The notes below the pieces were generated by a model. The model worked only from the letters and a program-made list of their open reading frames with translations, did not search any database and was not told the origin of the DNA. From Botryllus schlosseri (Eukaryota): a stretch of 64,000 nucleotides of DNA. A program made the position numbers and the translations under genes. This document shows positions 6,113-62,021 of this stretch, in pieces (position 1 is the first letter of the stretch; the number at the start of each line of letters is the position of its first letter). The stretch spans positions 26,660,001 to 26,724,000 of the forward strand of contig CM119375.1 in assembly GCA_051294905.1 (NCBI GenBank), given 5' to 3'.

Positions 6113-7097
6113 GAGCCAGCTATAATGGTAGGTCTATAAAGTAGGCTACAAGCTGTAAAATGTCATATGATAAATTCACCGATAGTGCGAAATCTACGAT
6201 ACAAACGAAATGCAGGTTGCAAAAAAATTTAGACTTCGTAAAAATTTTTGACTTTTTTTGACATGTACAAAAAAATCGCCCTAATCATAAGATATCATGG
6301 GATTTTAGATGATACTGTCATTTTTCATATCATAATGAGTGTTGGTCTCTGATGGTCGGATATATCATGCAATCAGTAGCGTATTGCATAAACCATATAC
6401 TGTAATCAAAGATTTACATAATGTAAAGCCTCCATGTGACGAATATTTCGCATTTGAATAATGGATCTGAGTCTCATTTGTGGCAGCAGCAGCTGTTGCT
6501 GTAAATTTATTTATCTTATAATGTCGATAGCAATAAAACTATGTCTTGCATTCAATACATTTATAATATCCGCCTATGTCAACTGTTCTTCTCTCAGTTG
6601 GCAGTTGTCAGCAAAGCAAATTTCTTTACACTTGTACATTTAAGTACATTTAAGTACATTCAATCCTCTCCACAGCAACATTTCTTTCTGTGCAGACTTG
6701 TACAAATTAATGAATTTTCTTGAAAATTGTGGACTACAACTGAACTACATACTTGTTAAAACTTGGAACTTGAACTTTGAAAATCCGCAAAAAAATAACT
6801 TAAACACAACAACTAGATCATATTCCGAAGCAAATCCACAACTAGAACTAGGGTCAGTTAGTTGACCGTTAACTAACTAAACTTGTAGTTTGTGCAAGTC
6901 TGTTTATGGGCTTTCTCTATTTTTGATTTGCATGTCCCCTTTGTGCAGCTTTTTATTGATAGGGTTTGTCTTGCCATATTTTAGGAAATGGTTACCCCTA
7001 TCTAACTGGATGTCATTTCCATTGTTTAACAGGTCGAAGAAAAGGATATTAATAGTTCAAAACTGAAATTGCTGTGGACAATACAATACATTGTAAA

Positions 7098-7323
7098 ATG
7101 GCTCAAAGCCCCCATTCACTCGGTCATGTTCCAGCGTCCATCGCTAATTTTAATAAACGGACCGCCTCGCCGTCGATATCGATGGGTTGTCTGCCATCGA
7201 CATCTACAAATGGATCGTACTATCCCCTCCTCCCGCAAACCCCAGCGTCGATCATCTCAACAGCTGCTAATCAAGCCGCGGCACTGGGACTGCCGATGTA
7301 TGGAACTCCTGGGCTCATGCCGG
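7098..7323 (+). CDS. RAR: Distal first coding exon, probable RAR isoform 1 A region
   Basis: ATG at 7098 with in-frame TAG at 7053. Acceptor ttgtttaacag| at 7032 leaves a 65-nt UTR segment. Encodes MAQSPHSLGHVPASIANFNKRTASPS...GLPMYGTPGLMP. Donor CGG|gtaagt is phase 1. Assignment to RAR is inferred from phase compatibility and from finding no terminal exon before the RAR exon. Confidence 0.7.
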
Positions 7324-9865
7324 GTAAGTGATACCTAACGTAGCCTGTCATTTTAACCTGCGAAGTAGTCATGTGACACTAATGTGCCGCAGCTCACGCT
7401 TTTGGAATCACTGGGTAACTGGTGTTAAGAATATTAGCTCCATCTTCTTTCGATAATTTTTTTTCCTCGTAGTTGTGTTTGGGTCAGGGTGTAACATGTA
7501 ACAATGGGTTTCAATAAAACCGTATGTCAAAATGTAACATAAAGAACAAAACAATGTTCTTCTCAGTTTTTACCATTGCATTTTCAGTAAGGTTTATCGT
7601 GTGTGTTTAATAATCACAAACGTATATTTCTTGATTTCCATTAGCTCCCGTCAAAGTTCGACTGTTCACAGCAGGGTGAGATCAGAACCTACCGTAGCCA
7701 CTACCTTGTCTTCTGTACTTTCTGTTAAAAGTACGATTGCATAGTAATGCGTTACTGGCGAAGGAAAAGACTCTACTGTGCAGAATTTGAGGACTCTTCC
7801 AAGAACAAATATTTGATTTATTCTTATCTGTTTGCCTACTCATTTTTCTCATGCCATACAGTAATCCAATGGCAATACGGGAGAAACGATATCATCTAAT
7901 TATGCAGCCTCGAGTTTTAGGTTACAATTATTTTCACGAAGAAGGGTCCGGTTTCCGAACAGAATAACATGATTAAGTAACTGGATTTCCAGCTGATCTA
8001 AGTTCTAGGGAACAGTGTTTTCGCTAGGTCCTTGCGCGTATAGTGATTTCAGAACCATATCCCAGTATACAGTTGTGGGACAATGCACTTGAACGTAAAA
8101 ACGCATGTATAGGACGTACTGTAATGATTTCACGCGCTTTTAAATGGAAGTTATATGCAACAGTGAATTTCAAGAGATTTTTGTCGTTGTGTTGTTATTC
8201 CGACCGCTATAAATATTACATCATGTTGTATAGATCAATTCTTCGTTGAGATGTAGGCCAAATTAGTCACGTGACTTATGCGTGTGTAATCAGGGTATTG
8301 GAATCGATTTTTCGCATCCATCGACATCTGTGCTATTTAGTTTCCTCTGTCCTGATTGGGTAATTGATGACTGATTTGATCCGAATTATGTATTTCGCAC
8401 CCTCCTTTGTGCCAAATCGCCGAACATTTTTCTAAATTTTGATTGATTGATTTAATTGATAAATGAAAATGATTATTGACACCTTGTGGAAACCTTGAAA
8501 CCTCGATTGGCCGTATCGCAGGATACGAAACATGTAGTACAAAGTTATTATACACGTTAGTGGAAATGACATATATGTGAAGTCGTAACCAACCCACAAC
8601 ATTGTCACGAAGCGCAACGAGATAGGTACGGTTGAAATAATACCAAATCATTTTTTATGTGGTGCAGAACTGGCGTTATATTGTTTGTGGAGGCATAAAA
8701 GGTACATATTTTACATATATTTCATACCGTTGTGACGTCGTACTGAAAGTCGAATGACGAACACCGTAATGCGCATGTAACTCTGTCCTTATTGGTTAAT
8801 TGATTGGATATTCAGTTACGCGATCAGATTACCAGCTTGTAATCACCAAACACGACTTTCCGAAGTCCTAACTCAATACAGCTGCAGTCCAGTCGGGCCG
8901 ACATTTGAAGTTTAGGATAGCCGAAATGGAGCGCGTATTTCTTGTCATGGTCGACAGATCCATCTAAAATGATTAATTACATCGCCGTGCTACTCTGACG
9001 ATATAAACAGTCCAATAATTGTTTATTCATAAATCTTTAAATGTTGCCCACATGAAAGCTTGGTCCGCGCCCTGAAGATCCCGTCATAATATACACCTTT
9101 GTGAAACTACTGCAAACATTGCTTTGTCTGCGGTTCTCAAACCATTTATTGCGCAACCCAAATCTGACACACCGAAAGAAATACATTTCTAGTTCTAGGA
9201 TGCTACGCTTTATGTATGTATGAAACAGAAAAGGGACAGGCAACCAATCGTAGTACGCTACACAAATCAATGAAACATAATGCGTTGGACGAGAAAGTCA
9301 TTGATGCAGTGTGATTAGTATTATTAAGATCGATCATAATCATTATGTCCGACTATCAATACCGGGCATCCCAAGCTTTTCATGGTCGCGACCCAAATTT
9401 CGATTTGAAAATGGTCTGCGACCAGACCTCTAAATTTATTGTGCTTATTACTAAAACTGTTCAGCACCTTCGTCCAAACCTACCCACGACGGCCTATGCG
9501 GGAAAGCTGGCGACTATGTGTCCAGCATAGTATCTAGTCCTAGTCACGAACTACGTGCAAAAAGTTGTCAAGCTCACGGCCCCCTGAATCATTGTAATTG
9601 GAACGCTTACCTATCATTTCACAAAACCACGCATTGCAAAACAGTGCGGGCCCTTTATATGTGGAAGGTTGCTTTCACTTAAGATCAGACCTTCTATACC
9701 TATTTATGACGCTGCCATATTGCCGTAACGAAATGTCTACGTGCAGTGCCCGACTCAGTGTACTTGGAAATGTGTACTGTATATACAAAAAGTGTGCGAA
9801 GATCGAAAAATTGTACGTATCTTTTGTCAAGAAATTCGGCAAATACCACTGTTTTATATCTTTAG

Positions 9866-10024
9866 ATCACGGAGCTTTGATCAACGCCGCTGCTGCGGCC
9901 TTGACGGCGGCGCTGGGGATGCCGCTAAGGATGAATTCCCCTGGCAGAATACCGAATATTCCTTCCGAACTAGTACAGCGGCAGATGCTTATGCAGGCCC
10001 ACTCCAATACTCCGATTCCTACAA
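9866..10024 (+). CDS. RAR: 159-nt symmetric phase-1 exon, Ala-rich, isoform 1 exon 2
   Basis: Acceptor gttttatatctttag|, donor CAA|gtaagg. Joined to 7323 it reads DHGALINAAAAALTAALGMPLRMNSPGRIPNIPSELVQRQMLMQAHSNTPIPT. Confidence 0.75.
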
Positions 10025-12704
10025 GTAAGGCGGCATTTTGCGCGTATAGCTCATTGCGTTCAGCAAGGTTTCTCAGACTTTTTGCAACTGCGTACCCGTT
10101 CGATTTACATGGCGTAACCTTTTCAAGAATAGGCGATGTGAATCGAAAGTAAATTTACGACGCCCGTAAAGTCGATTTTAGGGTAACTGTAAAAAAATTA
10201 ACGTAGGCCGAAAGACGCTGATGGGGGATACTATCCTTACATTAAATTTTTGCTAACAGAACCCTGGCTTACATCTCACTTAGGTATAATAGATGGATAT
10301 TGGATAGTCTTAACGGCCTTGCTACAGTGAACCATGTCTAGCGCAATGCAGAATGAGTTTGTCATAAGATCCACTTCACAGTGATCATCGGCCGCCCCAT
10401 AAATTATAGCCTGCTTATCATTGTACTGAAGATTGCAACACCGCTGATCAGGCAGCCTTCATAAACATGTGGCCCTGCTTCTAGTAAAACTAATCTACGA
10501 AAGTAAGCTACGCAAAACTCAACACAGCGACCGTAGAGAAACATAAATTTGCTACATTTGATGTGGATCAGACTAGTAATATACACAATACAGAGAAGTG
10601 TAAACGTTCATTAATTGCATCACGAATCTAGATATGTGTAAAAGCATTTTGGTTTAAGGCTACATTTGTACCCTTTATCTATTTTCTCTCTTGGCACAAA
10701 ATCGTCGAGACAGAAAATTATTACTGCGAAAATTGAACCTACTTGCTTACCCCAGTTTGAGAACCCTTGGCGTACACTGATCTTTCTTTGAGGTGCCACC
10801 ATTTACCTGTTGAGACCACCTATCGGCATGATAACATAGTGCAATGAAGTATCTTACGATACCGTAATTGTTTTTGTTTGGAATAGTGTTTGATCTGAAG
10901 CCATATCGCGACATTTTGATGCAAAAATTTGAATATAAACTCGTCTTCGATTTGCCGAGATGAAACAATGAGATATTTCTAGTTTCTAATGGCACTAAAT
11001 TAGGGAGAAATGCCGATAATTTAATTCTAATCTAATTTATGAGACGTTTCCTTGATATGATTTTAATTCTAGTCTGATTTCTGGTTTTCCTGTAAATGAT
11101 ACAGGAGTACAGACATTCGCCAATCGCCATTCTTTGAATTTATTCGATGTCCAGCCCAGTTTTTCGCGAATTCAGTAATTCTAATTCTAATGTAATTGGA
11201 GAAAACTGTAGCTATAGTTCTAATTCAAATATATTTTGGACAAAGTGTGTAAAATGCTGTGAAAAAATGTGTGATGCTTCCCTTGAATATGTTGAATCGC
11301 GGTTTGCGCGAGTCATGGTTAGTAGGTGCCACGTTCGATGCACATCAGGGCGCTGACCTATCTATTATCGAGAAATTGACCCGCGTCCAGTTGTCCGCTA
11401 CTGGTAATCGTGTCAGTGTGTTTTGGCATTCCGTCAGTTCGATATTTGCATATCGGAAACTGCCAATCTGTTAGTTGTAACGCGATTGTGCTATTTGTGG
11501 CGCGGATCTATTTTAATCTCGAAGAGTGATGGGGTTCTACTGCTGTAACATAAGTGTAGGTTGCTACATGGGTGCGATATGACATCATCTGCTTCTCTAA
11601 TACACTTGCAAGTCTGCAAGGATGGGATTTAGACATATGTCGTTGTAGCTACTTTCAGTACTCTGGATTAGGTACGCGTTTTGAGGTCGCTATTTATGAA
11701 TTGGATTTGAACGGAATGGAAGAAAATTTCCCGCAAGTTAATTGTAAAACCATACTGTAACGATACTTTCTGATCATTCCGCGTGCCATCTAGCAGAGAC
11801 GGACATTGGATGTGGATTCGGATTCGAATATGTGGATAAGAAGCTTCTGTCGGATTCGGTTCTGATTTGGTTTCGCGGCTCATGCAAAACTGGAATTTTG
11901 CGTGGGATTTCCAATAATTTTGAGTGTGATTTATGGAACATTACAATTTCAGTATACAGTACAATAGTACATGTCTGTAATTTACATGTTCTCGACCAAG
12001 CTGGGTGTTTGTTTAAAAGAATACTCCGCGTACTTTCGATTCCTTATCTTTTCACTTTATCTGAATCCTGTGGTGTTTTGAAGTGATGAAATTATTCATT
12101 ACTTGAATTCGAAAAATAATTGAAGATTTAGGTCGGATTCGGATTCGCATTCATAACTTCGGTTTTACTGGGTTGGGACGCGGAATTACTCAGGCTTTGA
12201 CATTGCGGCAACTTGGAATTTCGTCGTGTTGCAAAATTCTGGATTTGCATGGAAAAGTATCAGATCCGCCGGTCTCAACTAGCGAGCCCCGACATTTTTA
12301 AGATAGTTGTTAAATTATAGCGAAATGCCGGTAGTTTAATTGTAATCTGTGAAGCTGTTTTCTATGTTCTCATTTTACATCAAGTCTAGATTCCGGTTTT
12401 CCTGAAAATGCTATAGGAGAATTGTTTAGCGCGAAACGAGCCGTGCTTGGGGCACAGGCATTTGCTGTTGTCATGCTTATGAGAAGGAACTCTGTATTGA
12501 TATCAACTGAACTTTATTTTTATTGTATTGTTATTCTAATTCCCAAGTTTTCGCGTGCGTTATCAAGTAATTCTAATTCGAATCTAATTTGGAAACGCTG
12601 AAAATTGTATAGTTTCCCAACTTGGGACATAGTCGGTCACACAGCTGCTTCGATGCTATCCATCAAAGGCAATCAATAGCGAGACAATCTGTCTTATCGC
12701 GCAG

Positions 12705-12800
12705 GTTCCGATATGATCATGAGCGGCGTGATGCGGCGTCACGCGGACAGCATGACTGATGGATGTTCCGATTCGAAGAGATTAAGGAGCGAAAGTACAG
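12705..12800 (+). CDS. RAR: 96-nt symmetric phase-1 exon, isoform 1 exon 3 (not in the ORF track)
   Basis: Acceptor ctgtcttatcgcgcag|, donor CAG|gttggt. Open in phase 1-1: (S)SDMIMSGVMRRHADSMTDGCSDSKRLRSEST. Confidence 0.65.
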
Positions 12801-14341
12801 GTTGGTAATTGCATTTCGCGTCCTTGCCACGCAGGCTAATTGCGTTCGTTACGTTGATTTTTGCGGTGCTGCGTAGCGTGTTAAATTCAAATCTATTGTA
12901 GGCGGTGCTGTTTGGTAAATACGCCGGCCGTGGGCTGACTTGCTGTCGCGAAATCGCTTTTGAAGAAATATGAAACGTGATGAACATTATTTCACCACAA
13001 TAGACCATTCTTTGATCAACTTTTACTACGTTAGCTGTTAGCACCCAAACTGCACTCATTCCGTTGTAACAAACTCTTCCGGAACCATGAACACAGTCGA
13101 ATTGAAAAATTACCCAGCCAAGACCATTGTATCTTACTACATTAGTGGCTACACTCAAAACTTGAGATTAAATAAGCAAAAATAGAAATGTAGGAAAAAA
13201 CATCATCATGGACAATGATCAGAAATGGAACGAATAAGACGTATGGTAATTTCGCCGTTGCAAATACAATGTGGCTGTATCTTGAGAAGAGAAAGTCAAA
13301 ACATCGACTCAGATGAAGGTAATCTACGAAGTTCGTGCTGTACTGCTTTCAAACGACAAGTGCGCAATGGCGACATCAATTTGCTGTCATAGTTTTGTTG
13401 ACAAATGCGGTTCGTTTCCTGGTATGTTTGATTTACTGAGCGGTTTTGGTTATGCTGCGCGTAGCAATTTTTGCTAATGTATGCAATTTGCATAACAGAG
13501 GATCGATTTATTGTCGTCCCTAAATTTCGTCGATCTCCTGATTGTTTGTGTAGCGGGACTATTTCGTGGATTAGATATTCGTTTCGAACAAGTATCGAAA
13601 GTCATATTCAACCTGTGGGACCCAGTATCGAACTGTCTCGTACTTAGGTACCATAATACCCACTGGTTACCAGCGAATTAGGCACTTCACGGCCACTAAT
13701 CCTAGATAAATCCTACCTATATTCTTCCCTTGAACCGTAACCCAAATACATTATTAAATTGGATATATAGCTGGGTGAAACATTCATTTGGTATTACAAT
13801 ATTGATGCATCGTTAGTAGTTATTAGTACATGTCTCATGTGAAATTTAACACGTCGAATTCACTGACAACCGTCTTGAAAGCGTGACACGAAGCGTGTCC
13901 GATTAGTGACTAAACCCGCCACGTAGCGAAAGCCGACACAATACACAGCTGCGAAAAACACGACCTCGCAAAGCCAAGAACATCAAACTGCGAAGCCAAC
14001 CAGGATTTTCCCGAATGTAGAACCACGTTTTCGAGGCATCTGACGGTAGTATACCTTTATATATAAACAGAACCTACCTTGGAATATATCTCCAAGAGAA
14101 TTTTTGTATTTGACCCGGTGGAATGGGTGTGCGAAAGCAATACGTTGTACCGGAAAGTACCGTATACCTGACTTTGATTCTTTACTGTTGGAAATCGCTC
14201 TAATTAAACTTTTTCTCTTACATCTAGTAACCAGAGATGAGCTCGGATATTGTTTTCGTTTGGGCAAAATTAGATTACGGCCGGATATGTATTTCAATTT
14301 CGGTGAATAAGAACCGGATTCGGATAGGAAATATAAATTCG

Positions 14342-15571
14342 ATTGAATAATATCTTCATATTCAAATAAACCCGAAAATATTCGGCGCAGGGGTATCCTA
14401 ATCGTCAGCAACTAGTAGAGAATTGGAAAGCATATTGCAGATCAGCAGTCGAAAATATTCTGGCTTTTATTGTAACATGAAAAGGCCTATGTTGTTCAAT
14501 TGTATATTGGAGTTCTCAAACATTGTTCCTGAATATCAATCTAAGTTCAACGAGTATCGGACTCGGGACGGTTCAAATTGAATATATACTGGAAGTATAG
14601 ATACAGTGTAGGATTCTTGATTTGAAAATGTTCACTCATATCTCGGCTGACTCGGCATCCCATGACATCCACAATTGTAAATATCGATCCGCAGCTGGCG
14701 CGCGGGTCCGCGCTATCCCGAACTCAATGGCTCGTGTCTGCACGTTTCCTCGGCTGTGTGCGCGCGGCGAACGTCGACAATTCCCAGAGCCGCTTTTCAG
14801 TAGCAGCCTACTGTATTTTCGCTGCAAATGTAGCCTGTAACGTTGCTCGTTTATCATCGTTCGCGAGTGCGCTGACTCGGATCGCGCACCCATTTCCAGT
14901 CAGTTTCCTTGTTATTTCGAAATAGCAATTTCGAGCGTAGCGTGTGCCGTTTGTGTGAAGTCTATGGTCAACAAGGATATGATATGTACGTCATTTCTGA
15001 GTCTATAGTTTTTTTCCGCCAAGCCGACCCGATTGACCCGGAAAGTTGCAGTATTTGAAAAACTCTTGGAGACACAGAACTTCGATATACTATACAGTTG
15101 ATACTAAATACTATACGACTATTGAACATTGATATACCAAGTTCTTTTGAACTCTCTACTAGTTGCTGACGATTGCCCCTGACGAATGTCAGCCGAAAAC
15201 ATTCGGGCTTATTGCAATATGAATATATTACTAGGGTTACCATATTTTGGAAATCTGAAAAGAGGACACATTTTCAAAATTTTCAGACTTGCAAAACCGG
15301 AGGAAAATCCTGAAAAAATGTAAATTTTTTTCCACATCGTAGTCAATTACCTGAAAAAAGGTCAACTTCCGGCCAAGCTCCGGAAATACCCGGCGGAGCG
15401 TTACTTCAGTGCTGATTTACTCTATCTATGTCGATTTTGCCATATATTTAACCAAATGTATCAAAATAGAGGACAGTTGGGCGTCCTCCGTGGACACTTT
15501 TTAAAAAGTCAAAAAATAGGACATATCATCTTAGAAGAGGACGTATATGGTAACCCTATATATTATCCAAT
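14342..15571. mobile_element. Long-inverted-arm element (family C) with two arms, a CpG-rich core of about 450 bp and a nested MITE
   Basis: Left arm attgaataatatcttcatattcaaataaacccgaa...cgtcagcaactagtagagaatt is mirrored in reverse at about 15060-15231 and 15559-15571. Nine-bp flanks ataaattcg / tcaaattct match at 6 of 9. Confidence 0.5.
15232..15558. mobile_element. hAT-type MITE with TAGGGTTACCATAT termini
   Basis: Perfect 14-bp TIR. TSD tatattac / tatattat (7/8). Inserted in the end of a family C arm. Confidence 0.85.
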
Positions 15572-18500
15572 TCAAATTCTGTTCCGCGACCCTTATCCTG
15601 ATGCTGCGTAGGTTTCACGAAATACGTAAATCTAAATTTGGCCAATGAAAGTTGTTGAAATCCGGTTCCATGCTTCCTTCCGCTGGGTAAGCCACTAGCC
15701 GTTTGTCCTGTCCCAAACAAGGACATGGTGTCGTCATACTGGGATTGCTATCGGTCGTCAAGAATCGCTTCATTCCGTGATCGCGATTTTCGAACCGCCG
15801 CCGTTGTGCGATTTTCAAATTCACGTATGTTTGATATTACAACTTTCGCTATACACCTGATTACCGAGTATCGTAACGACTGAGGTCAAAATGATGTGTC
15901 TTGTCCGTGACAACTTGCGATGTTGGCAATAAGCGAAATACGCGTGTATCGACGTATTCAGAAATTTGCAACACGGCGATTACCCTATGATTAGAGCCAG
16001 ACTTGTAAAGATATATCGGTATCGGTCATTAGAGGTAAAAAAATGTCAATTTCCGTGACGTCACGGCGTAGTGGTGGAGAGTCAGAGAACTATAATCTGC
16101 GCCCGCTTGGCTGGGCATACTGATCTATTTCTTATAGCTTGCTGGTGAACATCGCTTCTGTAGACAACCTAGCACTTTCAAATTTTGTTTCAACATATAA
16201 TATTTATTAAATAGAAACTTTCTTCTCCTGTAGCAATGCGGCTACTCGCTTGAATTTAACCAAATTTGGTGTGTAGGCTTAAATTAGGTAACCTAACAAT
16301 TTTACCAAGTAGCCAGTACAATTTGAGAAAAAAAAGTCATTTTTGAACACCCCTATAATGTTCATATGCAATGCTCTTTCCAATTCTCTACTGGTTGCTG
16401 GCGAGTGTCAGTTTGAAATTTGAATGTATTTTTCAATTGCATATTGAAGTTCTGTACCTTCAAAAGTGTGATCTGATCATAAATAGTCACCAAAAGATTC
16501 CTTTGTCAATCGCCGACACGACTTCTAAGGCGCCATCCCATTAAAACCTGCGGCGGGCTCTGCGGCCATGCAAATTTCACCACACCCTGCCGATTTAGCA
16601 AACGACTTCGCAACTCCGCACGTATCTATCCGGCTACAATTAGCCGTTTCAGTTTTGCCACGCAAGATTTCAATGTCAAGTCACAGCCTGTTTGTGTTGG
16701 AAACACGTAAAACACTTAGACTTGTCATATTTGTCTAATATATCTGACGGCTGTAAACATAGAGGCGGGCACGTTGAATGCGGCTGCGGTCGGTCGTTTT
16801 CAGTTATTACCGTGTTGTGTAATTCGCTGATGATTATCTGGCGTTGTGTGTACGCGATTATACGTTTCTGACGCTGATACGTTTTCGGAATGGGACTTAG
16901 AACCAACGATCCTGCATTTTAGTTGTTGAAGGCCGGGACGCATTGTCTGCGTTTGTTCAAAAAAACTTTATTCAAATTTTATAGTCTAGTCTAGTTGATT
17001 GAATTGTTAGATTGCGTAAAAAGACGCGGGCATCGCATTTGGCTGTCTTACAACCTGAGCGGAGCTGTTACACAAAAAATGGATTTATTTAAATTTGTTC
17101 CGTTGTCGAAACAAACGGCTTATAATAAAATTGATCAAGTCCGGGCCCGTAGAAGCGAAGTTTAAGCAACATTTAGCGAAATGTTAGAATTTCCAACCTT
17201 ATATCCAAATTTTTCCAAGCCAATAACCTCGTTTCTACGAGTTGGAATTGATCTGAATTTGTTTTGCATCGGTTTTTTAGACAATGTAACAATGTCATGG
17301 AATAGGCGCTAAAATTAGAAATAAAAATATATTTGTTTAAGCATATGCAAAATATTTTACTCTTGTACCTCCTAACCTAACAATTGTATCAAGTAGCAAG
17401 CACAATTACAAACAAGTTGTTTTAACAACCCTGCGCATTTGCGCATTCACATCAGGGGAAATTGTGCAATGTGCATTCATCATCAACGGGTGTGTTAGCC
17501 CACCTTCAAGTTTGACGGATCATGTCTATGTTTATTGTTTACCGATAGATGTGACATGTGACTCATCGCCGATTGCTGCTTTGTTCTGGTATGAGTAACG
17601 CGCATAACGCAGATAAGGCCGGTTGACATGGTCGCAGTCGGGAAATGTTGAGGATCTGAGCTGGTAATCTTGTTCCCGAGTCATTGGTTTTCTCCATCAT
17701 TGACATATCAAGATGATCTTTGCCTTGCAACGTTAGCTCGTGCTGGGAGCATTGGCGAACGCACCCTATCGCCTCTCGTAACTAACCACGACCTGGAGAC
17801 TTCTACAGTACAAACTACCGATCTAGTTCGTTTACGGTCAACTAACTCCTGGTTTTTTGAGTAGTTCTAGCTCTAGTTGCGCATTTTGAAAAGTGAGTAG
17901 TTCTAGTTGCGCGTTTGTAGAACTAGAAAACACGTGTCGTCATTTGACGGGAATCCTGATACCGATGTTCTGTTGTGTGATGTTCCTGCAGCCATTGCTA
18001 ACTCAAAGAGTAATCACTACTAACAATGACTTAGCCATGGGGTGGTTTTGGGGGTCGAAACTACGTCCTTCTAAAATTCCGATTCATTTTCTTGTATTTC
18101 TTTGCTCATCTGCATTTCAGTAATTCGCATTGTAAGTTATTAGCTAGTTGTTCGAAATGTCGTTAGTTCTAGTTGCTAGTTTTTGAAAAGTGAGTAGTTT
18201 TAGTTACGCATTTTGGAAATCCAATATACTTGTTACAAGTCTGCACTGCTCCAATGGTCGCGTTGAAAGGTTGTTATCTTCTGACTGCACTGGTGTAGTA
18301 TATATACAATTATATGTTGGATTTTGTTGGCTGGCTTGTCGTGGTGTGTAACGTTGACCCCGTACGATAACTGCAGGAATTCCAATTATCATACATGCCT
18401 TTGGAAGGCTTACGTGTTCTGAAAATGTTGGCACCATTTCGCATTCCCGACGCTGCCTTTTTTGTCGTTCCATGCAAATCGGGTTTCATATCACGGCCGA

Positions 18501-19394
18501 CGCGTGTGAATCGACGCCAACTTTGTGACCTCTGCTCATGCATTGTTCGCGATCAATTGGGCGCGGTATGCGCGAGGTCTGAGACGTCAAAGTTTCATTG
18601 TCATTTCACTGGCGATACTTCAAAGCGCTTACGTCGATACGAAATATTTGGCTGCGAGTTGAAATCCATTCTCTTAGTCTCTGAACAGGACATGACTGTG
18701 GTCGTAACCGAGCGATTGGTCCCATAGGTCGGTCTTGTGCTGTGGACTTGTGGTTATACTTGTACTATATCGGAATATGCTAGTACAGGGGTCACCAACT
18801 CAAAATGGGTCGTGGGCTACTTTTCAAATTTCGTAGACGCCACGCGCCGCATGAATTCAATATCGGGATAAAATAGGCCACATTGTTTAACAGCCACGTT
18901 TTTAAAACTGTACGTCCGCACAACGCTGTGCTGTTTAAGATAGGCGATGGACATAGTTACCACAAAATAAATACAAATGCAAAGATATCTTCTATTCTAT
19001 TTTGAACTATGAGCTGCGCACAGTACCCGGCAACACTTTTCAACAACTATAGAACCGAAATTGGGGTTAGCTAGTCGCGGTATTGTTGGAAAACTATCTC
19101 CTCGTAAAGCTCGATCGTGTGAATAAGCCCGATATCGTCAGTAATCGTTTGGTGTTAGTCACGACAAATACATCCTGCAATTTAGAAAGTACTCACTTAA
19201 GGAAAAATGTACCACTCGTGATATGCGGGTGTGAATCTACATCACGCTCCGGCTCACCCATTAAGAGTGTTTTCTTGTGGTGACGTCATGTTATTCGCAT
19301 CCACCACATCAAATCATCCCCGATTTATTTCGCCTATGATTTCGGCATGTTCTGGCCCGATGGCTGTTTCTGACGCCTTTTTTCACGTTTACAG

Positions 19395-19496
19395 ACTCGA
19401 ATCCGCATGGTTCATCATCGCCCTCGTCTCATAGATTGAAATCACCAGTGCAATACCACGACCAAGCCATGCGAATGAACTTTCTACACACTTCGG
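19395..19496 (+). CDS. RAR: 102-nt symmetric phase-1 exon, Ser/Pro-rich, isoform 1 exon 4 (not in the ORF track)
   Basis: CTGAC branch candidate, tract ttttttcacgtttacag|, consensus donor CGG|gtgagt. Open in phase 1-1: (D)SNPHGSSSPSSHRLKSPVQYHDQAMRMNFLHTS. Confidence 0.75.
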
Positions 19497-38310: not shown

Positions 38311-40455
38311 ATTGTAAATAGTGAGATATCGGTGATTTTTCCGTGTGTTTTACCCGTTATGATGTCAAAATATGTGACTTTACGATGCAGACCTACATTT
38401 ACATTTTCATCGGTTGCAAACGAGGTTGAGTGCCGCACTGGGAACCCTTCAGTAGCATTACACGATAGTCGGTACCAGCGACGTTTGAAATTAGATATCT
38501 CAAAATCGAGTCCTTGTCTTCATGTCAGTTCGCGTGGCACGCTTGCCGGGACTCATCACTGGAGCGATTCGTTTCGATGAGGCAAAAAGAGGCGGAAATA
38601 ATTGCGTTCGCTACACGCCTATTTCTTCACTTGAACTATTTCGTCAATGTATTCAATGCCGGCGCTGTGTCGGCATTCGGGTGTGACCGTACTGCGTTGT
38701 ATCACCGGTACTGCCAACACCACAACGTTTGTGATTGGGTTTTGCAATGCGTCACGATTCTGCATTGGAATCATCGCACGCCTGTTCGGTGGATGACGAA
38801 TAGTGATTTGCAGGCACGTTACGCAACGCAGACCGTGTTAGTCGAATGGTTACATCACAGACAAAAGAAATGAGGATTTTGTTGCTTTGTTACTACGTAG
38901 CGTTGCTATGATTTTACATCGAACAAGTTTAATAGTATTCAGGCTGGTACAAATTACAAATCTCGTTAGTTGGCGGTCAATGGATTACTTTTTGGAGTAG
39001 TTTTAGTTCTAGTTCCGTATTTCGTTGTCGAATAATTATCAAACACGTGTCGCGTGATTCGCTAACTAAGAGTCATCACTACTAAAAGTGGCGTAGCCAG
39101 GGGTGGGTTTTGGTGGTCGAACCCCCTCCCATTTCAAACTTGATCCGATTCCGATGAAATAAAACTGATGAGTTGCTTCCGAATGCAATCTAATTAGTTG
39201 TGTTTAGTTAGTTAGTTAGTTAGCTGCAGATTTTTAAATCTGGGTAGCTCTAGTCATGAGCTTTGAGAAGCGAGTAGTTCTAGTTCTACTTGCGCATCGT
39301 GAAAATTCAGTAGTTTGTAAAATTCTGATAGTATTCATTGCGTTGAACACTGCAAATGCTTCTCTACTGATGAGATTTCCCATCCAAGTATATCCTGACG
39401 CAGAAGCATGCAACGTTCGGGCTGACCACATTGTTCGCTTATGTTCCGCAAATTTTAATATTAATATTATGAATTTCGCCTTTCTGAATGTCATAGGTTT
39501 CAAACGCCTAGTATTGTAGTGAACACTAAATTCATCGGCAGAAAAGTGCTGTAACTCTATCCAGATACCCAATCTTCTATTGGGTCGCGACTATTATGGA
39601 CTGTCTTATGACCTAATAAAAGACAAAAGGTGTTTATTCTCCGTAAAACAAAAACACGGCACACTACAAGACTAGTCGATATTCGGCGGGAATTGCGATA
39701 TAGTAGCAGATTAACGGCGTGGAACGGTGCGGTAGAACTGTGACAGTTCGTCCAAGGTTACAACTTAATGTTCGGCGTGAGCGTTAGCTGCGAAAATTCG
39801 GTGGCGATTATGACAAGCGGTGAAAGATTATCGCCCTCTGCAATGTCGAAACATGCGTACGTCTAATTATTATCACCTGAATATGACAGACAGTGTTAAT
39901 TACTGCGTGTTCAGTACTTTGTAACGCGGCTTTTATGTAGCATGATAGGTTACAGGATTTGATGCATACACGCAGTGTAGCAATCCGGATTTTTCACTTT
40001 ATTTATTTCCGTATCAGAACATGAATCACAATTGAGTATAATATCTAATTATTTGAGTGTGTTAGTGAGATATGATTCTTTAAAACTATTATCAGATTTC
40101 CAGATTGCGTTGATTTATCAACGAGAACTATAGTTTCGATACTGTTTTATAATGAGGAAGACAGTAAACCTCGATTAGTCCTATCGCAGCATATAAAATA
40201 TGTAGCAGGAAGCTATGTACGTTAGTGAGAATGACATATCCGTCAAGCCGTGATCGACCCACAGCACAAAGTGCAATGAAATAGGTACGGTCGGAAAAAT
40301 ACAGGTCGCATGAATAATTTCAAATTATACACGCTGTAATAATATGATATATTCTAGAATTTTCGTCGGATATCTTCATATTGCTGACTGTTGCTGTTCT
40401 TACATATCAAGATATTCTTAAATAATACTTGGTGGGCGAATGTCATACAGCTGCC

Positions 40456-41179
40456 ATGTCGAATTGCTTGGATCCGAACATGATAGATCTGATATCGTTG
40501 GAAATCGGCGGACGTGGCAATCCGTTGAGAATGCCTCAACCTTCAAACGGCCATGTCCCAGTCAATAAACACAACGTCGACCATTTCAATCGGCAGGATG
40601 TCGGATATCCCATGCAGCAATCACACCGCGGGATTGTTCCAGAATTGAGCCAGTATTCTGCTGATATTACCAGCCAGCCTATGAATGTAACATACTCCCA
40701 TTCCAACGCTATGAATGTCTCGACGCCTTTCACATCACCGCAAGTCAAGACTGAATTTACACAGTCTTATCAGTATCAAGGATATCCCATGGATTCGGCG
40801 CCTTCTTACTCAAACATGAATGTATTTCCAACTGACAGACCTAGCTATTCCCCCAACCAACAACTGACCCCAGAAATGCCGCAGCCTTCCCCTCAAATTC
40901 CTAATCGTTCCCCTCCTGGTTTTGATTTCGCAAAGTTCGCTATGATGCCTTCGAAAGCCATCGATAACATCTACGCGGACTTGTACCCGAGCTATAAACC
41001 CAGGCCCGCCCCGACCCCCGGCCGTAATTTCGTGATCCCCAGTCCTGTGGGGTACGGGAAGGGTCCGAATCAGTATAATTATCAAATGGAACAGTTTCAA
41101 GACCGCGAGAGACAAGACGGATATTACGAACGCAGGGAGCCAATGGCCTACCACGCTGGAATGCATATGCGCAATGGAG
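40456..41179 (+). CDS. RAR: Large P/S/Q-rich exon, probable RAR alternative A-region exon (isoform 2, first coding exon)
   Basis: Long GC-richer ORF (MSNCLDPNMIDLISLEIG...YHAGMHMRNG) with in-frame TAA at 40423 upstream. Sequence turns T-rich after GAG|gttctg at 41179/41180, a weak phase-1 donor that is in frame with 42814 and 61828. The 3' boundary is less certain. Confidence 0.7.
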
Positions 41180-41989: not shown

Positions 41990-42488
41990 TAGGGCTGGGC
42001 AAAATCGAGTACCTCGGTGATTCGATTCTGAATCACGTAATTTGCTTCGAGTCGAGTAATCGAGTATCACTCATTATGACGTCATAACAAAATGTAATAT
42101 GTCGAAGTATGTACCGTTTATGCCACCACAAAGGATATAATGCCTGTTATCCATCTGATAAATGGTACTAAGGTATTTTTTCGACCATACCGAATTCATT
42201 CCTCTTGATGACAATGTTGTGGGATAATCATGGAGTTCGGAAATGTGCTACGTCCAGTAACCTTCGTAGATTTGTACTCTATGTTTCGTATGCTACGATA
42301 CCGCCAATCAAGGCTTCAACAGTGTAAATTAGTATTGAAACTATAATTCTCGTTGATGAATTGACTTTCAGTGGCGAGAAGCGTATAATTTCATTACTCG
42401 AAAAAATCGCTTTTTACTACTCGACTCGAATCATTAAAATTAATACTCGATTCAGATTCGAGTACTCGAATCATTTTGTCCAGCCCTG
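41990..42488. mobile_element. MITE with (T/C)AGGGCTGG termini, nested in a family C copy
   Basis: TAGGGCTGGGCAAAAT / ATTTTGTCCAGCCCTG (14/16), with subterminal CGAGTA/TACTCG motifs. It splits a family C consensus (...gctgacga | ...tgacgattacccctg). Confidence 0.7.
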
Positions 42489-42813
42489 CAGTGACGATTA
42501 CCCCTGACAAGTGTCAGCCGAACATATTCGGATTTATTTCTGTATAAATATATTATTAAATTGTATACTTGAAGATTCTCAGCGTGTAAAACACGGCGCT
42601 GGGATGTGTGCGCGGTCCCGCGGCGAGCCAAATTAGATTTCATCAAATTAAACGCGCAATTCCGTGACTCGCGCGCGACTAATCGAATGCCGCGATTGCT
42701 CAAAGCTTTCGTAACGAACACGGTCCGTGTTGGTGCGTCTTCTGCTGCGATTTGCGCCGAAATTAAGGGCACTCGACGTCATCCGCTAACCCCGTTTCGC
42801 TTGTGTTTTGTAG

Positions 42814-42930
42814 GCGAACATTCGCACCTTGCCAAGCAGAACGGGGACTCTAACAACAATAGAGTGATTCAGCAGGCCGGGATGGAACAAAACGTGAACG
42901 GACGGAGGAGCAGTAGCGAGAAATGTAGAG
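42814..42930 (+). CDS. RAR: 117-nt symmetric phase-1 exon, probable RAR A-region exon of isoform 2
   Basis: Branch point GCTAAC at 42785-42790, tract cccgtttcgcttgtgttttgtag|, donor GAG|gtaaga. Open in phase 1-1: (G)EHSHLAKQNGDSNNNRVIQQAGMEQNVNGRRSSSEKCR. Confidence 0.8.
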
Positions 42931-44160
42931 GTAAGAGATACGCGGTTTGCTTTGATAGAAAACGGGCGGACTCTCGCATCTCCTGGTGCGTGCCGGATTA
43001 AGAAATTAAGTTAGGAAAATGGGTGATTCATTGAGATTATGCTGCGTGGTATTGGCTTCGGTTTCCTACACCTTGGGTGCTTGTTGGGGCGGTGGTTTAC
43101 GGCGGATCGTGAAGCTTGGCGAAGTTTTAGTATGCTTGTGGAATGGGACTCCTTGTTGAAGCATGATCGATATTTTGTAGTCTAATGGCCGGGACACGGA
43201 TATTTCTTTCGAAGTGGGATATTGACTCGATATGATAGGCGAACCGAAAATAGTTATCGGCTTTATCGGAACCGGCTCAAAAATCCGAAATCGGTCGGGG
43301 TCTAATCTAATCCCAATCACAGAACCTATGCAAATTACTAGAATTTCAAAATGCTCAACTAGAACTACAACTACTCACTTTTGACGATGTGTAATTAGAA
43401 CTAGAACTGTTAACTTTTCAAAATGCGCCTCTACAACTAGAACTATATTCACTTCATTTTCAAAACCAGCAACTAGAACTGCTTGAAGAAAAACAGTCTA
43501 GCTAACAGTCACCTAATTAATTGATAGTTTGTACATGTGCGGTTGACGGCCGGAATTTTAGAAAAAAAAAACATCTCGCACGCACTTCAACTTGACGAGC
43601 GCACACGACATTGAGTCACACCTTAATCCCGATTTGACTCGGCCCGCTTCAGCCAAATCCCGTACGCTTAACGTCGGCAGTCGTTTCCTGTGTTCATGTG
43701 TCTGACGCTTGACACGAAGCTGCGGTGTCCTAACACCGCGCCAAGTCATAGGTTAACACCGTGCGGATTACAAAAAGGATTTCGATTACGTTTTTACAAC
43801 TGTGTTTTACCGCCTCGAGGATTTGTTGTGGTGATCGACACAGTTATTTTCGCTCGACTTGGCCGAAAAGGGTTTTCGGGAGACTGAACCCGTTAGAACT
43901 TGAAGCGGTTTTGATGAGAAAGCGGGGCGCTTCTACAATTTTACGTAGCGTGGTCTTCGCTACTAGTTTGTGATCAGTACTCTTGTCTGTTTCCAATCAT
44001 CTGTTGTTAGACTGCTCTTTTCCTTGCTTGTTTCAAAAGAGGATCTTTGAACCAGTAATAAAAACATTTGGCGCAATATTAGAATATAGGGTGCCCTTGT
44101 GATTATTCCTGTCGATTCGCTTTTCGTCATCTGGCTCGACATTCCAAATTCATGAGCTCA

Positions 44161-49301: not shown

Positions 49302-49318
49302 GGTTCACGTGAGGGTCA
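49302..49318 (+). promoter_or_regulatory. Perfect DR5 retinoic acid response element
   Basis: GGTTCA cgtga GGGTCA matches RGKTCA-N5-RGKTCA. It sits in CpG-rich sequence outside any repeat I could recognise, about 12 kb upstream of the proximal first exon. Confidence 0.7.
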
Positions 49319-56942: not shown

Positions 56943-56957
56943 GTGGTTCTAAACCGG

Positions 56958-56974
56958 GGTTCACACAAAGGTCA
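56958..56974 (+). promoter_or_regulatory. Perfect DR5 retinoic acid response element
   Basis: GGTTCA cacaa AGGTCA, about 4.4 kb upstream of ATG 61367. Confidence 0.75.
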
Positions 56975-58915: not shown

Positions 58916-61366
58916 TTCATTGTTCCGCAAGATAGGCGTTGATAATCCTGTTACGTAGGAAGGCGGTTGTAAGTGAAAGTACCGATAAAGTCTTGCGTTC
59001 GCACTCGGAATCATTGTAAATGTGTCAGGGTGTTAAAGTTTGTGTTGACACCGTGGGATAGTTTTCACTCCGTTCCATTTCAAAAGCGTAATACGACAGT
59101 GTCTGTTGTTGCTCCAGACAGCTAGCTGTCTTTTGCGGTTGCTTTAACTGACCTCGACTTCTCTTAAGCTTCCTGAACGGATGAATTATGCATTTTCAAA
59201 TGAATTGGGAGCGCCGGGCCTTTGTCGGGTCCTTGTTATTTTTCGTTACTTGATTCGATACGCTTTCGCAATGTTTGCGCTGCAGCGTTTCCGTTGCTTT
59301 ATGCGAGATTGTTCACACAGATAGCGCACTTTTCATCAGTTGTAAGGCATTGCCGAGTATACAGCATCGCTCGCGTACAGGCCCGAATCAATTGCCGTTT
59401 CTAAACAGCCCACGGCTAAATGTAGACGGTTTGATAACGACGGATGATATTGCATTCACCCTGTCTTTAGTAGGCTAGTTAGTCTCGTAATAAGCAAGTG
59501 GGACAATGCGATTTACGGCGGTGATAGTCGGCAGGGTTGGATACCTCGAAAATTGCCAGCTTTTGTGAATTCTAACTCAATTAGTGAGAAATGCAACATG
59601 TTCAGTTTATATCAAATCAGAGTTCATAAGCGCGAATCAAACGTCGGTACAGCAAGCTTGGCTCGTTTAGCACGATACAGTTCTGCAGCATTTACGGGAA
59701 ATCTATAAATTGATCAGAATTAAAATGTGAACATAGAAACATTTCAAATGTTGGATTACCCACATTGGCTCTAATCACGCAACTGGAATTATCTCGCTGT
59801 TCCAAGTGTCGGAGTCGGATTTCGCGTGCTGCATGAATGCTTCCATGAGACCTTTTGACATGATTGCGTTCGCTTGCTGCCCACGCTTGACGGGAAATCT
59901 AAATATTGCTTTACTATGTTTTGAAGCGCCAGTGGTCATCGCAAGAGATAACATTGAGAGGCGGCGTATCGGTGGCGATTAGTTCTCGCGATCTATTTCA
60001 AGGCACTTTACTGCCGAAGTGAAGAGCGACCGTTTCCACCCCTGTATTAGTCATAATGGAGGGTTGATTCGGTTGAAAAGTCAGCGTTTTCTGTGACAAT
60101 GTGCCGCCGTACTAGACGTACGGATGGTATGTCGCGGATATCCACAGTCGGCTAGAAAGGAGGTTATGACATTGTACGCGGATTTAGAGTCGGTAATATG
60201 ACGAATGGTGCAACATGTTTCTGCTTGATGTTTCGAAAACTGTGTGATATGAAGAATATGTACAGCTCGTTATGTACGATTTTTTCCTGACTTACACAGA
60301 GTACCAATCTATAAACTATCCATCTATCAACTGAATATTGGTTTTAAATAGTTCTAGTTGCAGATATTGAAAAGTGAGTAGTTTCGGTTCTAGTTTTTAC
60401 AAGTCTGAGGCAGGTATATTATCCTGTTCGCATGTCGCGGTATGCTGTTATGTTTACGACGCCAATGAGGTTTTGGTAGTCGGTCTACTTTCCAAATATC
60501 AATCAGCATTTCGAATTACCGTTAGCGCGAAATTACTAGTGACAACGGACGATGTTCCTTTGACAAGTTCGCAGGCGCCTGGCTGACGCGTCTCTCGGCG
60601 TAATTTGCCGTTCAATTGTCGTGTAGTACTGTAGTCCCGTTTCTCATCAAATTGTTGTTGCTTGTTATTGTTGGTTGGGCTGATCATTGCGTCTGCGGTG
60701 CTGATCGATGACATTTCGCGTAGGCTCGGTTTTAGTCCGGTCACGATAATTCCAAAAACGGCACCGATGCGCTAGTATATCTAGCAGCATGTTTTTTATG
60801 TACATTCCTTCCTATCATTAACGGTATTGTACGTTGGTAAAGGAGCGTTTGTGTGTATCCCCCAATTCGTATTCATTTCTCGATCTGGTTTACTTTCGTC
60901 ACTGGCTTTGTGTAATTGTTTGAAAGCGTTTTAGTAATACACAGCGGACATATACAATACGTTAACGCACCGTAGTTTGCTATCCTGTGAACGCGCTGGG
61001 TTGATTCTAAATATAAGAGTGCGGTTTCCTGCTTTGTTTTCTACTGGGGTTTCGAGAACACAAAGAGAATGAAGGTCGTTTTTGTTGTATTTGAAACCAT
61101 TTGATAATGTGTATATCATTCAAATGATGATGTGATCTATGACCCACTGAAATCAGCGTCATGACCCATGGGTGTATATCTTCAGGTCCAGTGATTTGGG
61201 TATTTCCGACCAAGCATTATTTGATATGCATATAGTTGATGTGTGTTGTGAAATTTGATCCTAGTCTCTCAACAGTTTTCACGTGTCTCCGGCAGGATCA
61301 TATTCTAAAATAGCACAGTAAGCCTGAAAATATCGATAAAGCTTGCGCTCTTGTAAGCGAAGCACG

Positions 61367-61643
61367 ATGAACATGGTTGAGTTCCAAGAGCAATGGCGCA
61401 ACAGAATGAACGGCATTCTCACTGACATCTTCACGACGGGCGGCGGTCTGGTGATGGACTCGCAGCCGCCCGGCATGCACATGAACCATCGCCAAAATAA
61501 CGGACACGCGGGGGTCCACGGGATCGTATACAATCAAAATCACCACGCGGGGTACCCGCACAGCCAGCCACAGATGGCGCCCCAGCAAGTGTCCGGGAAT
61601 AACTACACCAGTCCGTATTATTCGTGGGAATATTCGTCCAGAT
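61367..61643 (+). CDS. RAR: RAR proximal alternative first coding exon (A region, isoform 3)
   Basis: ATG at 61367 with in-frame TAA at 61337. Encodes MNMVEFQEQWRNRMNGILTDIFTTGGGLVMDSQPPGMHMNH...YYSWEYSSR (Q/H/N/P-rich). Donor GAT|gtgcgt is phase 1 and joins in frame to 61828 across a 184-nt intron. Confidence 0.85.
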
Positions 61644-61827
61644 GTGCGTAATGATTTAGTGCGCTGTAGCGACGATAGGTCTCGATTAGGCCTGGGTATC
61701 GTATGCATAACATGGATGCTTCCAATTTTGACCTTCAATGTTATCGCAACGAAAATAACGCCCAACCTTAGTTTCAACTGATTCAGTTTGGTGAACAAGT
61801 GAATGAAAACATTCCTTTTCGTTACAG

Positions 61828-62021
61828 CATCTCCCGACAGCGTGGGACTTTCCTCAGCCAGTAGCAACGCGTCCGGTTCCGAATCAGAAGGGGTGATGCA
61901 CGGCTACCCGCAACAGCCCCCGTCTCCGCCCCCACCCCCGAGAGTTTACAAACCGTGTTTCGTGTGCGGGGACAAGTCGTCCGGGTATCACTACGGCGTC
62001 GCGTCGTGCGAAGGATGCAAG
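61828..62021 (+). CDS. RAR: Retinoic acid receptor (NR1B) common exon: B region plus first zinc finger of the DNA-binding domain
   Basis: Translates to (x)[64 protein letters not shown], a near match to vertebrate [38 protein letters not shown]. Acceptor ttccttttcgttacag|CA (phase 1), donor AAG|gtgaga (phase 0). Both phases match the equivalent vertebrate RAR exon. Confidence 0.97.

What the first reader, a model, noticed from the sequence alone, without database searches (positions are those of the whole stretch)
7033..62021. Three mutually independent N-termini for one RAR across about 55 kb, all ending in phase 1
Seen: three ATGs (7098, 40456, 61367), each with an upstream in-frame stop, head exon groups encoding about 194, 280 and 92 aa of unrelated low-complexity sequence. 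Every donor is phase 1 and matches the phase-1 acceptor at 61828. Established: vertebrate RAR isoforms swap A regions at this same phase-1 A/B junction, typically from two promoters. Inference: this invertebrate RAR has at least three promoters and unusually long AF-1 regions.
Basis: partly seen in the sequence, partly recalled or inferred. Interest (0 to 1): 0.7.

Follow-up and report, generated by a model that had tools for sequence, protein, structure and literature searches.

The report
Sea-squirt RAR gene, three alternative N-termini
This is the 5' half of the single retinoic acid receptor gene of a sea squirt. Three alternative sets of first coding exons give three different N-terminal ends, a layout already annotated in related sea squirts, so it is a sound but fairly ordinary gene-structure finding.

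Summary
ATGs at 7098, 40456 and 61367 each have an upstream in-frame stop. Each heads an open exon chain of 194, 280 or 92 codons plus one base, and each chain ends in phase 1, matching the phase-1 acceptor at 61828.

The gene is a true RAR: the rest of the DBD and the LBD lie 4-10 kb past the window. The organism is a stolidobranch ascidian.

All three N-termini have orthologues on RAR proteins of related ascidians:
- A matches Styela clava isoform X1.
- B matches Styela isoform X2.
- C matches the short RARs of Polyandrocarpa, Clavelina and Ciona savignyi.

RNA contigs from three studies join 41179 to 42814 across a GT..AG intron.

1. The N-termini are not fully independent. In Styela, and in the same layout in Ciona, the A and B forms both pass through the small exon corresponding to 42814-42930. 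So 19496 probably splices to 42814, not directly to 61828.
2. Three promoters are not shown. One RNA contig carries the species' spliced leader directly in front of exon B1, so that 5' end is set by trans-splicing.

Long AF-1 regions are normal for ascidian RARs. Expression of A, and the joints 19496->42814 and 42930->61828, were not seen directly. The three forms may not have been described together before.

The parts
7033..7323 (+). Exon A1. Candidate acceptor at 7032/7033, ATG at 7098, donor GT at 7324 (phase 1).
   Evidence: Sequence. In-frame stop at 7053. tblastn of Styela X1 residues 70-119 onto 7170-7322, E 1.5e-8.
9866..10024 (+). Exon A2 (phase 1 in, phase 1 out).
   Evidence: AG/GT boundaries. 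Styela X1 residues 122-171, E 5e-7.
12705..12800 (+). Exon A3 (alternative in-frame donor at 12794).
   Evidence: Sequence. Styela X1 residues 175-205 onto 12710-12796, E 0.025. It fits collinearly in the 182-aa alignment.
19395..19496 (+). Exon A4, last A-specific exon, donor in phase 1.
   Evidence: Sequence. It is part of the spliced A region that aligns to Styela X1 residues 76-251 (49% identity, E 1.6e-32).
40412..41179 (+). Exon B1. Probable spliced-leader acceptor AG at 40410-40411, out-of-frame upstream ATG at 40440, start ATG at 40456, donor GT at 41180 (phase 1).
   Evidence: RNA contigs of X5, X6 and X9 cover 40405/40409-41177 and continue into 42814. Spliced-leader letters lie ahead of 40405 in one X9 contig. 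Orthologues: P0001 E 1.2e-61 and Styela X2 E 1.6e-18.
42814..42930 (+). Exon S: 117 nt, phase 1 in and out. It follows B1 and probably also A4.
   Evidence: Joint 41179->42814 with GT..AG in three runs. 62% identical to the segment shared by Styela X1 and X2. Contigs stop fitting the genome exactly at 42930 with 22-28 letters to spare.
61367..61643 (+). Exon C1, the proximal alternative first coding exon (5' UTR start not mapped).
   Evidence: Sequence. 51% identical to the Polyandrocarpa RAR N-terminus (E 1.2e-26). Also matches Ciona savignyi and Clavelina. Word shares in RNA runs are consistent with it being held.
61828..62021 (+). Common exon: B region plus first zinc-finger half of the DBD. 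Phase-1 acceptor.
   Evidence: Pfam zf-C4, E 2.8e-9. 86-89% identical to Styela and Polyandrocarpa RAR.
49302..49318 (+). DR5 element (GGTTCA n5 GGGTCA) between exon S and exon C1.
   Evidence: 2 matches in the window against 0.09 expected.
56958..56974 (+). DR5 element (GGTTCA n5 AGGTCA), 4.4 kb upstream of exon C1.

Best explanation
The window holds the 5' 55 kb of the single-copy-looking RAR (NR1B) gene of a stolidobranch ascidian. Three alternative 5' coding exon sets give three AF-1/A regions on one common body (B region, DBD, hinge, LBD).

- Type A uses four exons (7098-19496).
- Type B uses one long exon (40456-41179).
- Both A and B most likely feed into a shared 117-nt exon S (42814-42930), which joins the common exon at 61828.
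- Type C (61367-61643) joins 61828 directly.

All junctions are phase 1. The junction codon takes its first base from the variable exon: G gives Ala after S, and T gives Ser after C1. Any combination therefore stays in frame.

The mature B mRNA appears to get its 5' end by spliced-leader trans-splicing about 44 nt ahead of its ATG.

Shown here: the sequence anatomy, the orthology of each N-terminus to RAR proteins, the B1->S splice in RNA, and the leader on B1 in one contig.

Inferred: A->S and S->61828 in this species, expression of A, that each N-terminus alters AF-1 activity, and how many promoters exist.
For: RAR identity:
- zf-C4 in 61828-62021.
- Second finger and LBD exons at C5:26726274-26731600.
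- 4385 RAR-like hits, with ascidian RARs at the top.

Type B:
- Scored against all 1.84 billion representative proteins (every protein read by HMMER), the 243-aa exon has four hits at E<=0.001. Two are true relatives; the other two are repeat proteins.
- One relative is the 688-aa Styela clava RAR isoform X2, matched at its residues 1-220 (E 1.6e-18).
- The other is a 272-aa ORF from another relative, in which similarity stops at the donor.
- A GT..AG joint 41179->42814 appears in contigs of three studies, with zero depth in the unique parts of the introns.

Type A:
- The spliced 194 aa align collinearly to Styela X1 residues 76-251 (49% identity, E 1.6e-32).
- In Styela X1 this continues into the S-like segment and then ASPDS.

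Type C:
- Conserved start MN(M/V)(V/M)EFQEQWRNRMNGIL, shared with Polyandrocarpa, Clavelina and Ciona savignyi RARs.

Junction codon:
- Ala after S and Ser after C1, exactly as in the orthologues.
- Vertebrate isoforms show T/A/S/P, i.e. NCN, at the same place.

Spliced leader:
- 17 letters on an X9 contig ahead of 40405 are absent from the window.
- The same 17 letters occur 639 times in the genome against 1-2 for the control.
- In 3 of the 6 copies read they continue TATTAAG|GT; two more carry variant ends before a GT, and one has no GT.
Against: No read or contig was seen that joins 19496 to anything, so expression of A in this species rests on orthology alone.

The letters that follow 42930 in the RNA contigs were not printed, so S->61828 is inferred from Styela and Ciona.

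Styela X1 and X2 are computed RefSeq models.

Similarity of A and B to the Ciona and Phallusia N-termini is not significant in profile searches. Only a short N-terminal motif links B to Phallusia; it ranked best among about 10,000 shuffled sequences.

The leader rests on one contig of one run. The aligned junction (40404/40405) is not at an AG. The AG at 40410-40411 fits only because the leader's last 7 letters nearly equal the genomic TATCAAG.

The bulk raw-read run X23 gave almost no reads on B1.
Confidence: 0.8

Rival explanations
1. Three fully independent first-exon groups each splice straight to 61828, and each is driven by its own promoter. Exon 42814-42930 belongs to B only.
For: Every donor (19496, 42930, 61643) is phase 1, and the direct joint 19496->61828 reads open. 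Exon S is symmetric (117 nt), so skipping it is possible. Low RNA depth 350-650 nt upstream of B1 in X9 and X23 could be the outron of a nearby B promoter.
Against: Styela X1, the A-type orthologue, contains the S-like segment between the A-specific part and ASPDS. The two Ciona forms likewise share a segment ending EKCR before ASPDS. The 5' end of B mRNA carries a spliced leader, so it does not mark a transcription start (PMC3074122).
Confidence: 0.15
2. One or two promoters only. A long primary transcript starts upstream of A1. The B form, and perhaps the C form, arises from it by spliced-leader trans-splicing onto internal acceptors. Isoform choice is then made by acceptor choice, not promoter choice.
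For: The leader sits on B1. A1 itself begins at a good acceptor (7032/7033) rather than an obvious start site. Patchy low RNA depth occurs at 38.4-40.3 kb, inside what would be the A-type intron. Trans-splicing removes the evidence of where transcription began (PMC3074122).
Against: Nothing shows that the trans-spliced pre-mRNA began at the A promoter. An ordinary B promoter with a short outron fits equally well. Other unique parts of the introns have zero depth. The two DR5 elements upstream of C1 suggest a separate proximal regulatory region, as at vertebrate RAR P2 promoters (my own knowledge, not tested).
Confidence: 0.25
3. Exons 7098-19496 belong to a separate upstream gene, or are a decayed relic, and do not contribute to RAR protein in this species.
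For: There is no direct RNA evidence for A here. The only clear orthologue is one computed Styela model, and a search with its A part found no other protein.
Against: All four exons keep open frames, AG/GT boundaries and matching phases. They are 49% identical to Styela X1 over 182 aa while the flanking DNA shows no similarity. No Pfam domain or other coding signal that would make up another gene was found around them.
Confidence: 0.07

Closest known systems
Styela clava RAR isoforms X1 (705 aa, P0006) and X2 (688 aa, XP_039274751, P0002)
   Same: The two long N-termini are orthologous to A (49% identity) and B (37-45% identity). Both run through a shared segment equal to exon S (62% identity) and then ASPDS... 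and the DBD. The common part is 84-93% identical exon by exon.
   Different: Styela X1 has about 70 extra N-terminal residues. No C-type Styela isoform was among the hits. The Styela proteins are computed models.
Polyandrocarpa misakiensis RAR (K7ZRU3, 503 aa), and the Clavelina and Ciona savignyi short RARs
   Same: The N-terminus is orthologous to C (MNMVEFQEQWRNRMNGIL...SW(E/D)Y..R|SSPDS). The junction codon is Ser, as here.
   Different: Only the short form is on record for these species. The middle of the A region is poorly conserved.
Ciona intestinalis RAR (Q4H2W2, 638 aa; isoform X1, 645 aa) and Phallusia mammillata RAR (694 aa)
   Same: Same architecture: two different long N-termini converge on a shared segment ending EKCR, followed by ASPDS. 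Phallusia and Ciona X1 share with B a motif at residues about 9-19 (IDL.SL.IG).
   Different: Overall sequence similarity of their A regions to A and B is not significant.
Vertebrate RAR alpha/beta/gamma N-terminal isoforms (type 1 from a distal promoter, type 2 from a proximal RA-responsive promoter)
   Same: Alternative A regions join a common B region at a split codon N|CN (T/A/S/P in vertebrates, A/S here). There is a distal and a proximal arrangement, and DR5 elements lie upstream of the proximal first exon.
   Different: No detectable sequence homology between tunicate and vertebrate A regions. The tunicate A regions are 2-4 times longer. At least one tunicate form appears to be leader trans-spliced, which vertebrates do not do.

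Membership tests
Retinoic acid receptor (NR1B) | C4 zinc-finger DBD with P-box CEGCKG | tested here: met
   Pfam zf-C4 on 61830-62021. Second half at C5:26726274-26726429. CEGCK|GFFRRS reads across the intron.
Retinoic acid receptor (NR1B) | Nuclear-receptor ligand-binding domain downstream in the same gene | tested here: met
   PF00104 hits at C5:26729562 and C5:26730686. Seven downstream exons are collinear with Styela and Polyandrocarpa RAR.
Retinoic acid receptor (NR1B) | Closest relatives are RARs rather than THR or other NR1 members | tested here: met
   The window's exons map collinearly onto Styela and Polyandrocarpa RAR at 66-93% identity over the DBD and LBD exons. The relatives of that Styela RAR are tunicate and then vertebrate RARs. 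One source labels the Styela protein 'thyroid hormone receptor beta-like', another 'retinoic acid receptor alpha-A-like'.
Retinoic acid receptor (NR1B) | Binds retinoic acid and activates through RAREs with RXR | not testable with these tools
   Needs binding and reporter assays.
RAR-type N-terminal isoform system | Alternative first coding exons, each with its own ATG, joined to a common B-region exon | tested here: met
   Anatomy. Each N-terminus is found on RAR proteins of other ascidians.
RAR-type N-terminal isoform system | Junction at the A/B boundary inside a codon (phase 1) | tested here: met
   G|CA and T|CA here. A or S at that residue in tunicate isoforms. T/A/S/P (NCN) in vertebrate isoforms.
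RAR-type N-terminal isoform system | Each isoform seen as RNA in this species | tested here: inconclusive
   B: splice 41179->42814 in three studies. C: only word shares of 0.41-0.50 in runs shown to be RNA.
RAR-type N-terminal isoform system | Separate promoters for the isoforms | not testable with these tools
   Needs capped 5' ends. The leader on B1 hides the start site (PMC3074122).
Spliced-leader trans-spliced mRNA (tunicate type) | RNA 5' end carries a leader not encoded at the locus | tested here: met
   17 leader letters lie ahead of 40405 on one X9 contig. No copy in the window at up to 3 mismatches.
Spliced-leader trans-spliced mRNA (tunicate type) | The leader is a multicopy genomic sequence followed by a GT donor | tested here: met
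   639 copies against 1-2 for the control. Of six copies read, three continue TATTAAG|GT, two carry variant ends before a GT, and one has no GT; upstream flanks are unrelated except in two near-identical copies. Many copies are probably leader-headed retroposons (earlier notes s1-253985 and s1-278689).
Spliced-leader trans-spliced mRNA (tunicate type) | Junction at an AG acceptor | tested here: inconclusive
   The aligner puts the break at 40404/40405 (no AG). The leader's own end, TATTAAG, is nearly the genomic TATCAAG at 40405-40411, so the true junction is probably after the AG at 40410-40411.

The most novel reading that the evidence does not exclude
The triad of A, B and C N-termini, with A and B converging on a shared mini-exon, is an ancestral ascidian RAR architecture. 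In this reading, the choice between at least some isoforms is made by selecting a spliced-leader trans-splice acceptor inside a long primary transcript, rather than by selecting a promoter. The DR5-flanked proximal C form would be the counterpart of the RA-inducible vertebrate type-2 isoforms.
Probability: 0.15. Interest if true: 0.55.

Novelty: new member of a known kind. Interest (0 to 1): 0.3.

Why it matters
RAR is the central receptor of retinoic acid signalling. In budding ascidians it has been linked to bud development and regeneration (review PMC7827873).

Knowing that one gene offers three conserved AF-1 variants gives exact exon coordinates for isoform-specific probes and knock-downs. 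One variant appears to be leader trans-spliced, and two DR5 elements sit ahead of the proximal form.

The shared split codon with vertebrates supports an old origin of the A/B swap point.

None of this changes the general picture, because the isoforms are already present as database models in Styela and Ciona.

Tried and rejected
- Profile searches of the A and B regions against the Ciona and Phallusia N-termini did not score above shuffled sequences. Only the first 24 residues of B pick Phallusia as best of about 10,000. I therefore claim shared architecture with Ciona and Phallusia, not sequence homology.
- I tested homology of the C region, and of the 'MxxC(L/M)(D/E)' start of B, to vertebrate A1/A2 regions. 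Neither scored above shuffles. Rejected as unsupported.
- A word-index search with the A part of Styela X1 found only itself.
- Look-ups of the contigs encoding P0001 and P0002 gave no DNA.
- Larger ORFs elsewhere in the window and in the 10 kb upstream have no Pfam match and do not look like genes. A weak Pfam hit of exon B1 (Lig_chan-Glu_bd, 17.9 bits against a cut-off of 30) is noise.
- Literature searches found no paper describing ascidian RAR N-terminal isoforms. That is a gap in what I could search, not proof of novelty.
- Contig depth ratios between B1 and S differ between runs, so I did not use them as evidence for a second input into S.
Full report
**Observation**

I read the claimed places directly and recomputed the chains.

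- Group A is 7098-7323, 9866-10024, 12705-12800 and 19395-19496. It is 583 nt, i.e. 194 codons plus one base.
- Group B is 40456-41179 and 42814-42930. It is 841 nt, i.e. 280 codons plus one base.
- Group C is 61367-61643. It is 277 nt, i.e. 92 codons plus one base.

Each ATG has an in-frame stop upstream (7053, 40423, 61337). All boundaries are AG/GT. Each chain reads open into 61828-62021. The three N-termini show no similarity to one another.

**What the gene is**

Exon 61828-62021 encodes a Ser/Pro-rich B region and the first half of a C4 zinc finger (Pfam zf-C4).

The window is G000:C5:26660001-26724000. Searches of the genome with the Pfam DBD and LBD families place the rest of the gene 4-10 kb beyond the window end. 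The ORFs there read as typical RAR DBD, hinge and LBD exons.

tblastn of ascidian RARs maps eight collinear exons, from the common exon at 61828 to the stop, at 66-93% identity over the DBD and LBD exons and 59-62% over the short C-terminal tail.

The nearest proteins are Styela clava RAR X1 and X2, Polyandrocarpa misakiensis RAR, and then Clavelina, Ciona and Phallusia RARs. The animal is therefore a stolidobranch ascidian. Its own RAR protein was not among the database hits.

**Are the three N-termini RAR N-termini?**

*Type B.* I scored the 243-aa first exon against all 1.84 billion representative proteins, each read by HMMER. It has four hits at E<=0.001; two are true relatives and the other two are repeat proteins.

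- The first relative is a 272-aa ORF from another relative's sequencing run (E 1.2e-61). In it, similarity ends exactly at the donor (..NGG) and the ORF then runs on into unrelated sequence.
- The second is the 688-aa Styela clava RAR X2. Its residues 1-220 match (E 1.6e-18), and it carries zf-C4 and LBD domains further on.

In Styela X2 the next 39 residues match exon 42814-42930 (62% identity), followed by ASPDS and the DBD.

*Type A.* The spliced 194 aa align collinearly to Styela X1 residues 76-251 (49% identity over 182 aa, E 1.6e-32 pairwise). Three of the four exons are found separately by tblastn.

*Type C.* It starts with the same 18-residue motif as the Polyandrocarpa, Clavelina and Ciona savignyi RARs. 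It ends with the same SW(E/D)Y..R before the junction.

**The shared exon**

Styela X1 (A-type) and X2 (B-type) are identical from the segment that equals exon 42814-42930 onward. The two Ciona forms, Q4H2W2 and X1, likewise have different long N-termini that converge on a common stretch ending EKCR before ASPDS.

Here that exon is 117 nt, phase 1 in and phase 1 out. It accepts either donor, 19496 or 41179. Skipping it also keeps the frame.

The most likely map is A4->S->common, B1->S->common and C1->common. This corrects 'three mutually independent N-termini'. A and B probably share their last 39 residues.

**The junction codon**

After S the split codon is G|CA (Ala). After C1 it is T|CA (Ser).

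The orthologues show the same pattern: Ala in Styela X1/X2, Ciona and Phallusia, and Ser in Polyandrocarpa, Clavelina and Ciona savignyi.

Among the vertebrate RARs returned, the residue before (I/V)ETQS changes with the N-terminal isoform among T, A, S and P. These are all NCN codons that differ in the first base only. This is what a phase-1 junction predicts.

**RNA evidence**

I had one reads call and used it on 38101-43100.

- Contigs of three runs from three studies (X9, X5, X6) cover exon B1 from 40405/40409/40521 to the donor. They jump 41179->42814 over a GT..AG intron.
- Unique intron bins (41441-41774, 42610-42776) have zero depth, so these runs are RNA.
- Contigs of exon S start at 42813 and stop fitting at 42930 with 22-28 letters left over. 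This fits further splicing, but the letters were not printed.
- The raw-read bulk run X23 (6% sampled) gave almost nothing on B1.
- For C1, the same RNA runs hold 0.41-0.50 of the words of 61340-62030. That is more than the common exon alone could supply (about 0.25), but it is not proof.
- Type A was not examined at RNA level.

**Spliced leader**

One X9 contig has 17 letters ahead of 40405 that do not fit the locus. The 17-mer is absent from the window even at three mismatches. It occurs 639 times in the genome, against 1-2 for the reversed control.

I read six copies. In three of them the 17 letters continue TATTAAG and then GT. Two near-identical copies continue TATTTGAAG and then GT, and one has no GT at that point. 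The upstream flanks are otherwise unrelated. That is the signature of a spliced leader. Earlier notes of this scan on other parts of the genome describe leader-headed LINEs and SINEs, which explains the high copy number.

The leader's last seven letters nearly equal the genomic TATCAAG at 40405-40411. The real junction is therefore probably after the AG at 40410-40411, 44 nt before the ATG.

In trans-spliced genes the original 5' segment is discarded, and the mature 5' end says nothing about the transcription start (PMC3074122). The inference 'at least three promoters' is therefore open. A separate B promoter with a short outron and a long transcript from further upstream both fit.

**Comparison and novelty**

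Alternative A regions on a common RAR body are textbook for vertebrates.

Long ascidian RAR N-termini are already in the databases: Ciona at 638 and 645 aa, Phallusia at 694 aa, and Styela at 688 and 705 aa. I found no paper that describes the three classes together.

I could not show sequence homology between tunicate and vertebrate A regions, nor between A or B and the Ciona N-termini. Only a short N-terminal motif links B to Phallusia.

The finding is a correct and useful annotation of a new member of a known kind, with two refinements: the shared exon and trans-splicing.

**Limits**

- Expression of A, and the joints 19496->42814 and 42930->61828, are inferred from orthologues.
- The Styela isoforms are computed models.
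- The leader rests on one contig.

Noticed in passing
window 49302-49318 and 56958-56974 (+): Two DR5 direct repeats (GGTTCA n5 RGGTCA) lie between exon S and the proximal first exon C1. That is 2 matches against 0.09 expected by shuffling. They are candidate retinoic acid response elements ahead of the C form.
   Followed up: partly
window 41942-42609 (intron between B1 and S): A repeat containing long inverted 'tcgagt/actcga'-rich arms shows very high RNA depth (up to about 18,000 summed word depth), with many odd joints and loose ends. It is probably a transcribed dispersed MITE-like element, not part of the RAR mRNA.
   Followed up: no
G000 genome-wide; examples L006-L011 at position 1501: The 24-nt spliced leader (17-mer plus TATTAAG) occurs in about 640 dispersed copies, followed by GT in most of the copies read and mostly with unrelated flanks. 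That is far more dispersed than a tandem SL RNA gene cluster. It fits the leader-headed retroposons reported elsewhere in this genome.
   Followed up: partly
window 40440-40568 (+): The B mRNA leader region holds an out-of-frame upstream ATG at 40440, 16 nt before the conserved start. It opens a 42-codon ORF that overlaps the start of the RAR reading frame. This may be a translational brake on the B isoform.
   Followed up: no
G000:C2:6819054-6838091 (-), L002: A second NR1-type nuclear receptor gene has a first zinc-finger exon 77% identical in DNA to 61927-62023 of the window. Its DBD and LBD exons are spread over about 19 kb. Its identity (THR or another NR1) was not examined.
   Followed up: no
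window 39728-40280: Low-depth RNA contigs (X9, depth about 5) and a few raw reads (X23) lie 130-680 nt upstream of the B1 trans-splice site. This could be outron sequence from a nearby B promoter, or intronic pre-mRNA of the A form.
   Followed up: no
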